Source: Saccostrea cucullata (Eukaryota). From it: DNA of 64,000 bases. The stretch is from the NCBI RefSeq assembly GCF_032062105.1, contig NW_026925910.1, positions 62,001-126,000 on the forward strand, in the 5' to 3' direction. Position 1 is the first letter of the stretch; every line of letters starts with the position of its first letter. This document shows positions 18,301 to 25,564 of this stretch, in pieces. The position numbers and the translations under genes were made by a program. The notes under the pieces are model-generated. The model was not told the DNA's origin and ran no database searches. It saw only the letters and a list, made by a program, of their open reading frames with translations.

Positions 18301-21300
18301 AATTTAACATGAATTTATCATGTAATGAGTAAAATACATGTAAATCTTACAACACAAAATCTCCTAAAAGGAATGTCCATGTCATCTGGTATTGGCTTAT
18401 CCTCTGAAAGTAAAGAATAAGGACACTTTAGTTTAAAACTTTCCTGTTTTCGTGGAATTTAAAAAATCTAGATACATTTGTATGTGTGCACTTCAGTGAA
18501 ACGCACATATGCAGCAGAATTTGGTATCTTGAACCCCAATATCATGAATACAGTGGACCTTCAGATATCCGGATGCTTCAGTATCCGGACGCTTTTTCAT
18601 CGGGACGGAATTTTTAAATGTTATATTGTTTTGTTTAACTGGTGATTCAGGTATCCGGACGCTTCACATATCCGGACAAATTGACTAGGAACCAAAGCGT
18701 CCGGATAAATGAGGCTCCACTGTACCATGTCAAGAGTGATTTTGAATTTCCAACCCCTCAGTCTTTAAGTATTTTCCCTGGATATTTTGAACCTTTGAAT
18801 ATCTCAAATTGTCAAACCAGCCTTCATTAGACCTACCCAGCATTAATCGGCCCCCTAGATGAGTTTTTTTTTTAAGACCTACCCAGCATTAATCGCTCCC
18901 CTAGATGAGATTTTTCATCAATACAGAGATCTCGTCCTCCTAATGTCTGCATCTTCTTGTTGAGCATATCAAACACAGTGATCCACTTCAGAGAGTTCGA
19001 TGTTTCTATTGGCAGCTGAAACTGTTATTCAAATAAAATTTAGTATCTAAGCATACTTGTTGCTTGAAAGCGTGAGAGGAGGTTTACTGTAATGTAAATG
19101 TACACACACACCTATGAAGTGAAATGGATGTACTGATTCCTGTAATTTAAATGTTGTAAAACTTACAGCATTTTCGGTACTGTAACATTGCCACAGTAAC
19201 GATCCATGTACATTACAGCTCTGGCTGGCTCCAGTTGTTACGACAATGGGCAGAGAAATCGTCTGTAAAATTATTATAAATAAGGAAATAGAGTTAAAAT
19301 TTAAGTAGATCCTTCAAAACAAAGCTCTTCACATATTTCACCACTCTGAATTTCACAAATATGTTTTTCAGATTTTCATATTAAATATGCAATATATGTA
19401 GTGTATTTGTAGTGGGAGGAAAATTCCAATCAACCCTTATACTTACTGCTACAGGTATATCCTGTTCTGCGACCTTGACCCGAGTGGTGAAGACAATTCT
19501 AAATTTATCTTCACAGACTTGAACATCGGGCTTTCTCTCAAACTTCTCTATTTCCATTTTCTTAAAAGAAGCCAAGGCCTTCTTTTTCTCAAAAGTGGAT
19601 TCGTCGGTTTTGGCTTTTAGTCTGATCTCACAAGGACTGTCCCAATTCCCACTGTGAAACTTCTCATTGACCTCTGACTCGTTACAGAACTGTGCTTTCA
19701 CTTTCCCTTTACAATCAATGTTATCACAGGCCAGAAGTCTACAATTTCAAAAGTACCGTATGCATGTATCAAATACAAATATTTCGTTATTAAATATTAT
19801 AATGGATCCTTTTGTGACATGGCTGGTATTGTCAATAAATTTGACTTGTACAAACTTTTAGAGTCTAAAAATAAGGTTGCTAACAGATTAACAATCTCAA
19901 TACCTTGGACCACAATTTGATATATTTAGACAGCTTACCTTACAGAGCCGTAGAACTTGGGACATCTAAACTTCTGATTGGCTGTCTCCTCTCCCCCTTC
20001 CTCTGCCTCTTTATTCCTCTTTTTAGAGCCAAGTTCCACCTTTATGATGTGCTTCTGTTGTTCCGTCACAACAAAGGAACTATCAAAATAGAACCAGATA
20101 AAACTAGAATGTCCAAACGGGACAAAATACCCCCCGTTGGGTTTTTCACAAGTGCTCAATCATGAATATTTTATGGACCTAAGATAAGAGAGAAATGCTA
20201 AAACATTTTTAGTGCAAATGTAATTGCTCATTATATTTTTTATAAATGAAAGAAGGCGCAGCCTAATTAAAAACATGAGGCCCATGGGCCACATCTCTCA
20301 CCTGAGCACTAAGGGTAGGAAGAAGTAGAAAATGGCTTTTTATTGTAAAGTTTAAATCCAAAAGTAGTCCCATGACCAATCATGGATTTGCTATTTTTTA
20401 GAAAATGATTTTTACAGAATTTTCCTATATATATCTTTAAAAACTTTAGTCGGCCATTTTGGCCCCGCCCTACCCCTGGGGGGTCATGATTTGAACAAAT
20501 TTGAATCTACACTACCTGAACATGCTTCCATATAAATATGATGAATTATGGCTTCCTGTACCAAACATTCTAACAAATGCTCATGAGCTGCTCATGAGAC
20601 TCACATGAGAATCAAGTAAGAATTGCATGCAAATTAGGTAGAATTGCATTTTGCTCATGTGCAGATTGTTAGTCTTTACCCATACCAAACCATTCTCACA
20701 ATTTGCTCATGAGCAGCTCACGTGAGGACTAACCAGATTTCCTCACCTGAGTTGCTCACGTGAGTCTCATGTGCAATTTAACATGCAAATTAGGTAAAAT
20801 GCTCACGTGAGCAGGGTTCTGCACATAAGCATTTTTTGCTCACGTGAGGAATCATTTTGCTCACTCAGAATATTGCTCACGTGAGGCTCATGAGACTCAC
20901 GTGCAACAATTGCTCACTTGAACAAGTAACAATAGAACAATTAAAATTCAGATTACAAACATTATATAATTATATATGTAATTTTAAATTTGATTCATCA
21001 ATTACGTTTTAAATACTCTTGAGCAACATGTACATGTAAATAGATGTATGCATGCATAATTATGTTCAGTAAACTTCATATTTTAAACTTAAAATGAAAT
21101 AAAAAATTAAATTATTAATTATGTACAGTACACATCAATCAAAGTATAATTATCTAATAGTTCCATTTCCAGGAGATTAACATCCGATGTAAATGTCCAG
21201 TCAACATTTTTGACTGCACTTTGTCTAGTACTAGATGGACTAAAATTGTCTTAAAGTTGTCTTGGAGGCTAATAGATGTTTCTGCCTTTACTGCATGAAT

Positions 21301-24300: not shown

Positions 24301-25564
24301 GTTGCTCAAGAGTATTTAAAACGTAATTGATGAATCAAATTTAAAATTACATATATAATTATATAATGTTTGTAATCTGAATTTTAATTGTTCTATTGTT
24401 ACTTGTTCAAGTGAGCAATTGTTGCACGTGAGTCTCATGAGCCTCACGTGAGCAATATTCTGAGTGAGCAAAATGATTCCTCACGTGAGCAAAAAATGCT
24501 TATGTGCAGAACCCTGCTCACGTGAGCATTTTACCTAATTTGCATGTTAAATTGCACATGAGACTCACGTGAGCAACTCAGGTGAGGAAATCTGGTTAGT
24601 CCTCACGTGAGCTGCTCATGAGCAAATTGTGAGAATGGTTTGGTATGGGTTTGTCATTCTTGAGAAGAAGATGTTTAAAGAATTTTCCTATATATTTCTA
24701 TGTAAAAGTTTGGTCGGCCATTTTGGCCCCGCCCTACCCCCGGGGGTCATGATTTGAACAAACTTGAATCTACACTACCTGAGCATGCTTCCATATAAAT
24801 ATGATGAATTATGGCTTTTTCATTCTTGAGAAGAAGATGTTTAAAGAATTTTCCTATATATTTCTTTGTAAAACTTTGGTCGGCCATTTTGGCCCCGCTC
24901 TACCCCCGGGGGTCATGATTTGAACAAATTTGAATCTACACTACCTGAACATGCTTCCATATAAATATGATGAATTATGGCTTTGTCATTCTTGAGAAGA
25001 AGATGTTTAAAGAATTTTCCTATATATTTCTATGTAAAAGTTTGGTCGGCCATTTTGGCCCCGCCCTACCCCGGGGGGTCATGATTTGAACAAACTTGAA
25101 TCTACACTACCTGAACATGCTTCCATATAAATATGATGAATTATGGCTTTGTCATTCTTGAGAAGAAGATGTTTAAAGAATTTTCCTATATATTTCTATG
25201 TAAAACTTTGGTCGGCCATTTTGGCCCCGCCCTACCCCCGGGGGTCATGATTTGAACAAACTTGAATCTACACTACCTGAGCATGCTTCCATATAAATAT
25301 GATGAATTATGGCTTTGTCATTCTTGAGAAGAAGATTTTTAAAGAATTTTCCTATATATTTCTATGTAAAAGTTTGGTCGGCCATTTTGGCCCCGCCCTA
25401 GCCCCGGGGGTCATGATTTGAACAAATTTGAATCTACACTACCTGAGGATGTTTCCCCATAAGTTTCATCTTTCCTGGCACAGTGGTTCTTGAGAAGAAG
25501 ATTTTTAAAATATGCCACCAAATTTTCATTAATTCCCAATTATCTCCCCTTGAATGAGGGCGTT

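What the first reader, a model, noticed from the sequence alone, without database searches (positions are those of the whole stretch)
20555..24649. Transposon inserted backwards into a copy of itself: 1.9-kb inverted repeat in a STAT intron
Seen: a complete 2045-bp element (20679-22723, TA/TA flanks) sits 124 bp inside an inverted copy of the same element (20555-24649, TT TSD). Arms 20679-22601 and 22727-24649 are both 1923 bp and matched wherever I checked; the spacer is 125 bp. 20555-20677 also pairs with 22601-22723. Inference: a very recent local hop. STAT pre-mRNA would fold into a ~1.9-kb dsRNA stem, a substrate for ADAR or Dicer, or for RIG-I/MDA5-like sensors if it leaves the nucleus. 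A JAK-STAT gene could thus generate its own dsRNA or siRNA. The DNA would also be hairpin- and deletion-prone.
Basis: partly seen in the sequence, partly recalled or inferred. Interest (0 to 1): 0.85.

Follow-up and report, generated by a model that had tools for sequence, protein, structure and literature searches.

The report
Double transposon in oyster STAT intron
A jumping DNA element in an oyster landed backwards inside an identical copy of itself, at the scar of an earlier jump; the result is a perfect 1.9-kb palindrome in a STAT intron, like maize's chromosome-breaking 'double Ds', but no effect on the gene is shown.

Summary
A 2,045-bp non-coding TIR element (2-bp target duplications, CMC/EnSpm-like, about 55 copies, nearest other copy 92%) sits inverted inside an identical copy. 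The outer copy interrupts a 166-bp HINE satellite unit in an intron of the oyster STAT5-like gene. That intron is 9.5 kb here and 117 bp in the assembly's second copy of the gene.

One correction: the family has no TA at this site. The outer copy carries 3 extra bases shaped like a hairpin excision footprint, and the inner copy landed in that footprint. Two visits to one spot point to excision and local re-insertion. Such footprints fill the family: 28 of 48 four-base insertions fit, against 1.4% by chance, far more than in other repeats of this genome.

The structure is a 'double Ds' (maize), known in kind. If transcribed, it would resemble Mu killer. A fold-back artefact is unlikely, but no read set holds this allele. 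The dsRNA, ADAR and RIG-I ideas are untested, and the STAT link looks incidental.

The parts
20555..20677 (-). Right end (R terminus plus 123 bp of subterminal region) of the outer copy
   Evidence: identical to reverse complement of 22601-22723; terminus CCTGTACCAAAC
20677..20678 (.). TA target duplication of the inner copy, left
20679..22723 (+). Inner copy: complete 2,045-bp non-coding TIR element; 12-bp imperfect TIRs; subterminal CTCA(C/T)(G/A)TGAG-type motifs at both ends
22724..22726 (.). TA duplication (right) plus one base: with 20678 these form the +3 footprint present only in the outer copy
22727..24649 (-). Remainder (1,923 bp, including the L terminus) of the outer copy; second arm of the palindrome
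22602..22726 (.). 125-bp spacer/loop between the arms
20553..20554 (.). TT target duplication of the outer copy, left
24650..24651 (.). TT target duplication of the outer copy, right
20270..25740 (-). Host 1: HINE/Helentron-like element with a 166-bp (Cg170-like) tandem array, split by the double element (borders approximate, read by eye)
   Evidence: anatomy as in PMC7492417
20103..29496 (-). Host 2: HINE-like element with 146-bp repeats, enclosing everything; the whole 9.4-kb stack is absent from the second STAT copy (borders approximate)
27939..29146 (.). 1.2-kb TA-flanked multicopy TIR element (MITE) also nested in host 2
20080..29590 (-). STAT5-like intron (GT..AG, 9,511 bp; 117 bp in the second copy L032)
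19938..20079 (-). STAT exon downstream of the intron
29591..29724 (-). STAT exon upstream of the intron (in frame with the next exon across the junction)

Best explanation
This is a real, very young 'double' non-autonomous cut-and-paste transposon, made at this locus in at least two steps. (1) One copy inserted into a satellite unit of a HINE in the STAT intron (TT duplication; shown). (2) After replication, a 2-bp-TSD element, most simply the sister-chromatid copy of the same element, inserted 122-124 bp inside its right end (inferred). (3) That visitor excised, and the hairpin-sealed flanks were opened and joined, leaving a +3 footprint: AA became A-TT-AA (footprint shown; its origin inferred). 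(4) The footprint-free copy re-inserted, inverted, into the TA that the footprint had created (TA/TA duplication and precise ends shown; identity of the donor inferred). Consequences, all inferred: left and right ends now lie in direct orientation, the double-Ds substrate for sister-chromatid transposition and breakage whenever transposase is present. The palindrome is deletion-prone. STAT pre-mRNA from this allele would fold a 1.9-kb nuclear dsRNA stem that is spliced out; it is more likely to be edited or to feed small RNAs against the element family than to alter STAT. It is most likely a transient, private allele.
For: Arms are exact and both copies have precise termini and their own duplications. 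The family makes 2-bp duplications in 29 of 33 flank pairs, a count that includes a few allelic duplicates. No other copy is above 92%, and inner/outer form an identical pair whose nearest relative is L003. Of 48 copies, 46 have the plain site, one has -1, and an unrelated copy (L021) has a different palindromic +4 footprint at the same dinucleotide. Footprints of the form XY-rc(XY)-XY make up 28 of 48 four-base insertions vs 1.4% expected. The +3 class fits the hairpin model in 14 of 38 cases vs 12% expected. The second STAT copy, M. gigas and M. angulata lack the insertion. Nested or closely linked inverted Ds elements break and rearrange chromosomes (PMC3260210, PMC3429523).
Against: No read set holds this allele (best run has 0.32 of the sampled words), so the junctions rest on the assembly alone. 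A single +3 insertion fits the hairpin model by chance about 12% of the time. No autonomous partner was found. No second self-insertion next to a subterminal motif was found beyond chance. The 7 other intact inserts seen in family copies belong to other element types.
Confidence: 0.7

Rival explanations
1. One sloppy event: a single self-insertion (or excision followed by re-ligation of the inner copy) in which end-joining added filler bases that happen to read TA on both sides.
For: Needs no second visit to the same base. The added bases next to each flank partly match P-nucleotides.
Against: Both 3' ends of the inner copy are joined to TA, neither to native target sequence. Removing the inner copy and one TA leaves a clean member of a common footprint class in this family. 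A second copy has a footprint at the same site (L021).
Confidence: 0.15
2. Assembly artefact: a fold-back read or a mis-join of two identical copies.
For: 100% arm identity; fragmented, redundant assembly (1.17 Gb, 23,869 contigs); no supporting reads available.
Against: The flanks are not mirror images, and STAT exons stay collinear with the second copy on both sides. All four ends are exact termini with duplications. The +3 bases occur in one copy only. No other near-identical copy exists to mis-join.
Confidence: 0.08
3. A selected regulatory device: the STAT gene makes dsRNA or siRNA that tunes antiviral JAK-STAT signalling.
For: The stem folds perfectly. STAT is expressed and spliced in related oysters.
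Against: The allele is very young, absent from the second copy and from orthologs, wholly intronic, and part of a stack of unrelated insertions. Cytosolic sensors would need intron export.
Confidence: 0.05
4. Replication template-switch or hairpin repair duplicated the element without transposase.
For: Elements with long inverted repeats can seed inverted duplications (general knowledge).
Against: The duplicated segment begins and ends at the exact TIR termini with a 2-bp duplication, which template switching does not predict.
Confidence: 0.02

Closest known systems
Maize double Ds (Doring, Tillmann, Starlinger 1984, cited in PMC3260210) and inversely oriented Ds pairs (PMC3429523)
   Same: A ~2-kb non-autonomous TIR element inserted in inverted orientation into an identical copy of itself (details of double Ds from my own knowledge); directly oriented left and right ends; expected to be unstable and selected against.
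   Different: Not hAT (2-bp, not 8-bp, duplications); an animal; the insertion is 124 bp from one end rather than central, so the arms form one near-perfect 1.9-kb palindrome; the target is an earlier footprint; breakage is not shown.
Mu killer and 'Ac killer' alleles of maize (bioRxiv 10.1101/2020.01.07.897926)
   Same: Inverted duplication of transposon sequence including TIR and subterminal DNA, read through from a neighbouring host promoter, able to form a kilobase hairpin.
   Different: Here the hairpin is intronic and carries no transposase sequence; no siRNA or trans-silencing shown; animal RNAi pathways differ.
CMC/EnSpm(CACTA)-type non-autonomous DNA transposons (CMCT clade, PMC12730594)
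   Same: Short TIRs, 2-bp TSD, dense subterminal motifs; hairpin-type footprints in the copies.
   Different: Termini are CCC..GGG (CCT at the R end of this lineage), not CA..TG; no transposase gene or partner was found, so membership is unproven.
Inverted SINE/Alu pairs in vertebrate introns (own knowledge)
   Same: Intronic inverted repeats that fold in pre-mRNA and are ADAR substrates.
   Different: Those stems are ~300 bp and ~85% matched; this one is 1.9 kb and perfect.
Cg_HINE elements carrying Cg170 satellite arrays (PMC7492417)
   Same: The host: 166-bp and 146-bp arrays, 4-nt microsatellite, terminal palindrome, T-rich target.
   Different: It is only the landing site; borders were read by eye.

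Membership tests
double-Ds-type nested element (structure) | Complete copy inserted in inverted orientation inside an identical copy | tested here: met
double-Ds-type nested element (structure) | Each copy has its own target duplication and precise ends | tested here: met
   TT/TT and TA/TA; the TA lies in a +3 footprint
double-Ds-type nested element (structure) | Left and right ends in direct orientation | tested here: met
   R at 20555 and L at 20679 face the same way; so do R at 22723 and L at 24649
double-Ds-type nested element (structure) | Transposase-dependent chromosome breakage | not testable with these tools
   needs the active partner and cytogenetic or sequencing data
Ac/Ds (hAT) | 8-bp target duplication | tested here: not met
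   2-bp in 29 of 33 flank pairs
CMC/EnSpm (CACTA) | 2-5 bp target duplication | tested here: met
   range from PMC12730594
CMC/EnSpm (CACTA) | Short TIRs with many subterminal repeats | tested here: met
CMC/EnSpm (CACTA) | 5'-CA..TG-3' termini (most members) | tested here: not met
   termini are CCC..GGG / CCC..AGG; CCC-ended 2-bp-TSD animal EnSpm elements are recalled from memory only
CMC/EnSpm (CACTA) | Cognate DDE transposase with C(2)C and H(3-4)H motifs | tested here: inconclusive
   element is non-coding; 54 PF02992 matches in the genome, none on a contig holding this family's right end
Mu killer / Ac killer-type silencer | Inverted duplication of element ends inside a host transcription unit | tested here: met
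Mu killer / Ac killer-type silencer | Hairpin actually transcribed from this allele | tested here: inconclusive
   STAT is spliced in related oysters, but no run holds this allele
Mu killer / Ac killer-type silencer | siRNAs and heritable trans-silencing of the active element | not testable with these tools
   no small-RNA data for the source animal
Fold-back assembly artefact | Contig turns back on itself, so the flanks mirror each other and breakpoints are arbitrary | tested here: not met
   distinct flanks, collinear exons, breakpoints at TIR ends

The most novel reading that the evidence does not exclude
This family habitually hops into its own sister copy and out again. The double element is a caught intermediate of that cycle, which is why its copies carry about 23 strict hairpin footprints per 1,000 substitutions, against about 1 in other repeats of the same genome. 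When such a double lands in a transcribed intron it acts as an animal 'Mu killer' that silences the family through endogenous siRNAs.
Probability: 0.15. Interest if true: 0.75.

Novelty: new member of a known kind. Interest (0 to 1): 0.45.

Why it matters
Natural double-Ds structures are rarely caught in genomes because they are unstable; none was found in maize B73 (PMC3260210). This one shows that a 2-bp-TSD transposon family moved very recently in this oyster. It records a probable re-entry into its own excision scar. It also offers a ready substrate for testing hairpin editing, siRNA production and transposase-induced breakage in a mollusc. The by-product may matter more: hairpin excision footprints are a major class of short insertions in this family and are visible between M. 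gigas and M. angulata, which bears on why oyster genomes are so rich in indels.

Tried and rejected
One search failed and was repeated.

Coding or RNA-gene role: no ORF of note in the element or its copies and no Rfam match.

Other doubles: none at the same site. One search had no positive control. One search found this junction plus one hit, about what chance gives (my estimate is 2-3). Contig C19436, whose hit ended at the same position, is a degenerate single copy.

Autonomous partner: not found. The 12-mer TIR pattern was too common to link.

Reads: all runs came from related oysters (exons about 93-97% identical). The 'opposite strands 20677/22600' joint is only ordinary intact copies reading through the site, and base changes there are species differences, not editing. 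I laid 17001-22600 only, to avoid sending the long repeat.

A specific hot spot at this site: recurrence of footprints within 2 nt is only marginal (8 pairs vs 3.9 expected, P about 0.05), so I do not claim one.

Two older Ds papers were not held. The species was not established: it is an oyster other than M. gigas or M. angulata.

Full report
1. Observation. 20679-22601 and the reverse complement of 22727-24649 match at all 1,923 positions, and 20555-20677 matches the reverse complement of 22601-22723 at all 123. The order on the + strand is: right end of the outer copy, a complete inner copy (20679-22723), then the rest of the outer copy. The outer copy is flanked by TT/TT. Taking it out restores a 166-bp satellite unit matching its neighbours. 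The inner copy is flanked by TA/TA.

2. The element. It is non-coding and has 12-bp imperfect TIRs and clusters of a palindromic subterminal motif at both ends. The genome holds roughly 55 copies, and full-length ones are 81-92% identical to it. They make 2-bp target duplications of varied sequence in 29 of 33 flank pairs, a few of them allelic duplicates. This is the anatomy of CMC/EnSpm-type elements. The termini are CCC..GGG rather than CA..TG, and none of 54 Transposase_21 matches lies on a contig with this family's right end, so I leave membership open. Inner and outer copies form an identical pair, with L003 as nearest relative. Zero differences in 2,045 bp bound their divergence at 0.15%, unless polishing or conversion homogenised the arms. 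Allelic element pairs in this assembly differ by up to about 1%. No other near-identical donor exists, so the duplication was most likely local.

3. The setting. The gene is the ortholog of Magallana gigas STAT5A/B-like XP_034302780, with USP-TEN1-STAT synteny. The intron runs 29590..20080 on the minus strand (9,511 bp). The assembly holds a second copy of the gene (C5971, L032) in which this intron is 117 bp; in M. gigas it is about 0.4 kb. The extra 9.4 kb is a stack. A HINE-like element with 146-bp repeats contains a 1.2-kb MITE and a second HINE-like element with a 166-bp Cg170-like array (anatomy as in PMC7492417), and that second element contains the double. The STAT link is therefore the last of several chance insertions on one haplotype.

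4. The family has no TA at the self-insertion site. It reads C-AAA-G in most copies and C-AGA-G in some; 46 of 48 copies have no length change there. With the inner copy and one TA removed, the outer copy reads C-A-TT-AAA-G, three bases longer than the inner copy. That is what a 2-bp (AA) duplication followed by excision through flank hairpins leaves: one base lost, two palindromic bases gained (hairpin and P-nucleotide model as described for Ac/Ds in PMC5873905). An unrelated copy, L021, carries a different palindromic footprint at the same dinucleotide. Since the inner copy lacks the scar, it was copied before the scar formed, yet it sits exactly in it. The simplest path is a first self-insertion from the sister chromatid, excision with repair, and re-insertion of the released copy into its own repaired site. 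The junctions are shown; the path is inference.

5. Footprints are a family trait. Against the family consensus, 28 of 48 distinct four-base insertions have the strict form XY-rc(XY)-XY with non-palindromic XY; random insertions give 1.4%. Three-base insertions fit the hairpin model in 14 of 38 cases against 12%. Tc1-like TA-C..G-TA footprints also occur (9 cases). By one pairwise method the family has 30 strict footprints per 1,287 substitutions. Other repeats and allelic flanks of the same genome have 1 per 1,327 (P about 1e-8). The M. gigas/M. angulata STAT region has 4 per 579 (P 0.015) and two Mytilus species have 0 per 170. So the class is general in oysters and enriched in this family. 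Whether the visitors were the family itself is not shown. The seven intact inserts in other copies are other element types, and no second double was found. The controls are also small and partly more diverged.

6. Artefact check. Fold-back errors give mirrored flanks and arbitrary breakpoints. Here the flanks differ, the exons are collinear with the second copy, all four ends are exact termini with duplications, and three bases are private to one copy. No public run holds the allele. The four runs laid come from related oysters: they show STAT spliced and the family present, but not these junctions. I put the artefact risk near 8%.

7. Likely consequences (inferred). At the DNA level, left and right ends in direct orientation are the substrate for sister-chromatid transposition. 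Nested Ds elements break chromosomes and were not found in B73 (PMC3260210), and inverted Ds pairs rearrange rice loci at high frequency (PMC3429523). The outer right end keeps only 123 bp of its subterminal region, which may weaken this. A perfect 1.9-kb inverted repeat with a 125-bp spacer should also be deletion-prone (own knowledge). At the RNA level, the arms pair fully when folded, and this is the only long inverted pair in the STAT span. The stem lies wholly within one intron, 475 nt from the acceptor, so it should be spliced out in the nucleus. A-to-I editing is plausible, siRNA production is possible, and cytosolic RIG-I/MDA5 sensing needs export and is the least likely. [quoted passage not shown]

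8. Verdict. The feature is real in the assembly and probably real in the animal. It is a new member of a known kind (double Ds), in an oyster and for a 2-bp-TSD family. It has an unusual twist, insertion into its own scar, and a well-supported side result, footprint-rich copies. The functional claim about STAT is untested and probably incidental. Interest 0.45.

STAT exons were searched singly by reference, and the joined model was left out. Reads were laid only on 17001-22600. The species was not determined.

Noticed in passing
L032 (G000:C5971) and L034 (G000:C15540) vs window 15795-30475: The assembly holds a second copy of this STAT gene whose exons differ by 1-6% and whose blocks with intron are only 77-88% identical, more than other allelic pairs here (0-3%): a very divergent haplotype, a hybrid or mixed sample, or a recent paralog.
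   Followed up: partly
window 20103-29496: A 117-bp intron expanded to 9.5 kb by a four-level stack of nested elements (HINE-like > HINE-like > double TIR element, plus a 1.2-kb MITE) on one haplotype.
   Followed up: partly
L050 vs L051 (M. gigas vs M. angulata STAT region): 4 of 17 four-base indels are strict XY-rc(XY)-XY footprints, and four-base indels are as common as two-base ones: hairpin excision footprints look like a general class of oyster indels.
   Followed up: partly
family copies L005, L014, L018, L025 (element position about 1,390): Four different Tc1/mariner-like footprints (TA-C..G-TA) at one and the same TA in different copies: a recurrent target site.
   Followed up: partly
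L003 and L037: Two family copies (one degenerate) sit at the same position inside a larger repeat that is 88% identical over 1.5 kb on each side.
   Followed up: no
window 20679-22600 in runs X21 and X1: The element family is present in poly(A) RNA of related oysters (depth up to about 40 per strand direction near 21860-22600; a 1.5-kb contig in X1).
   Followed up: no
window 4660-5370 (+), 42824-43099 (-), 45400-47900 (+): Neighbouring genes: small heat-shock protein (HSP20), TEN1 and a ubiquitin-specific protease; USP-TEN1-STAT order is conserved in M. gigas and M. angulata.
   Followed up: partly
window 14159-14835, 30470-31940, 36243-37480, 7951-8122: Further HINE-like satellite-carrying elements (165-, 166- and 156-bp units) and a 24-bp minisatellite element.
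   Followed up: no
G000: 54 Transposase_21 (CACTA-type) matches, many in long stop-free frames (500-980 aa): the genome has many potentially active CMC elements.
   Followed up: no
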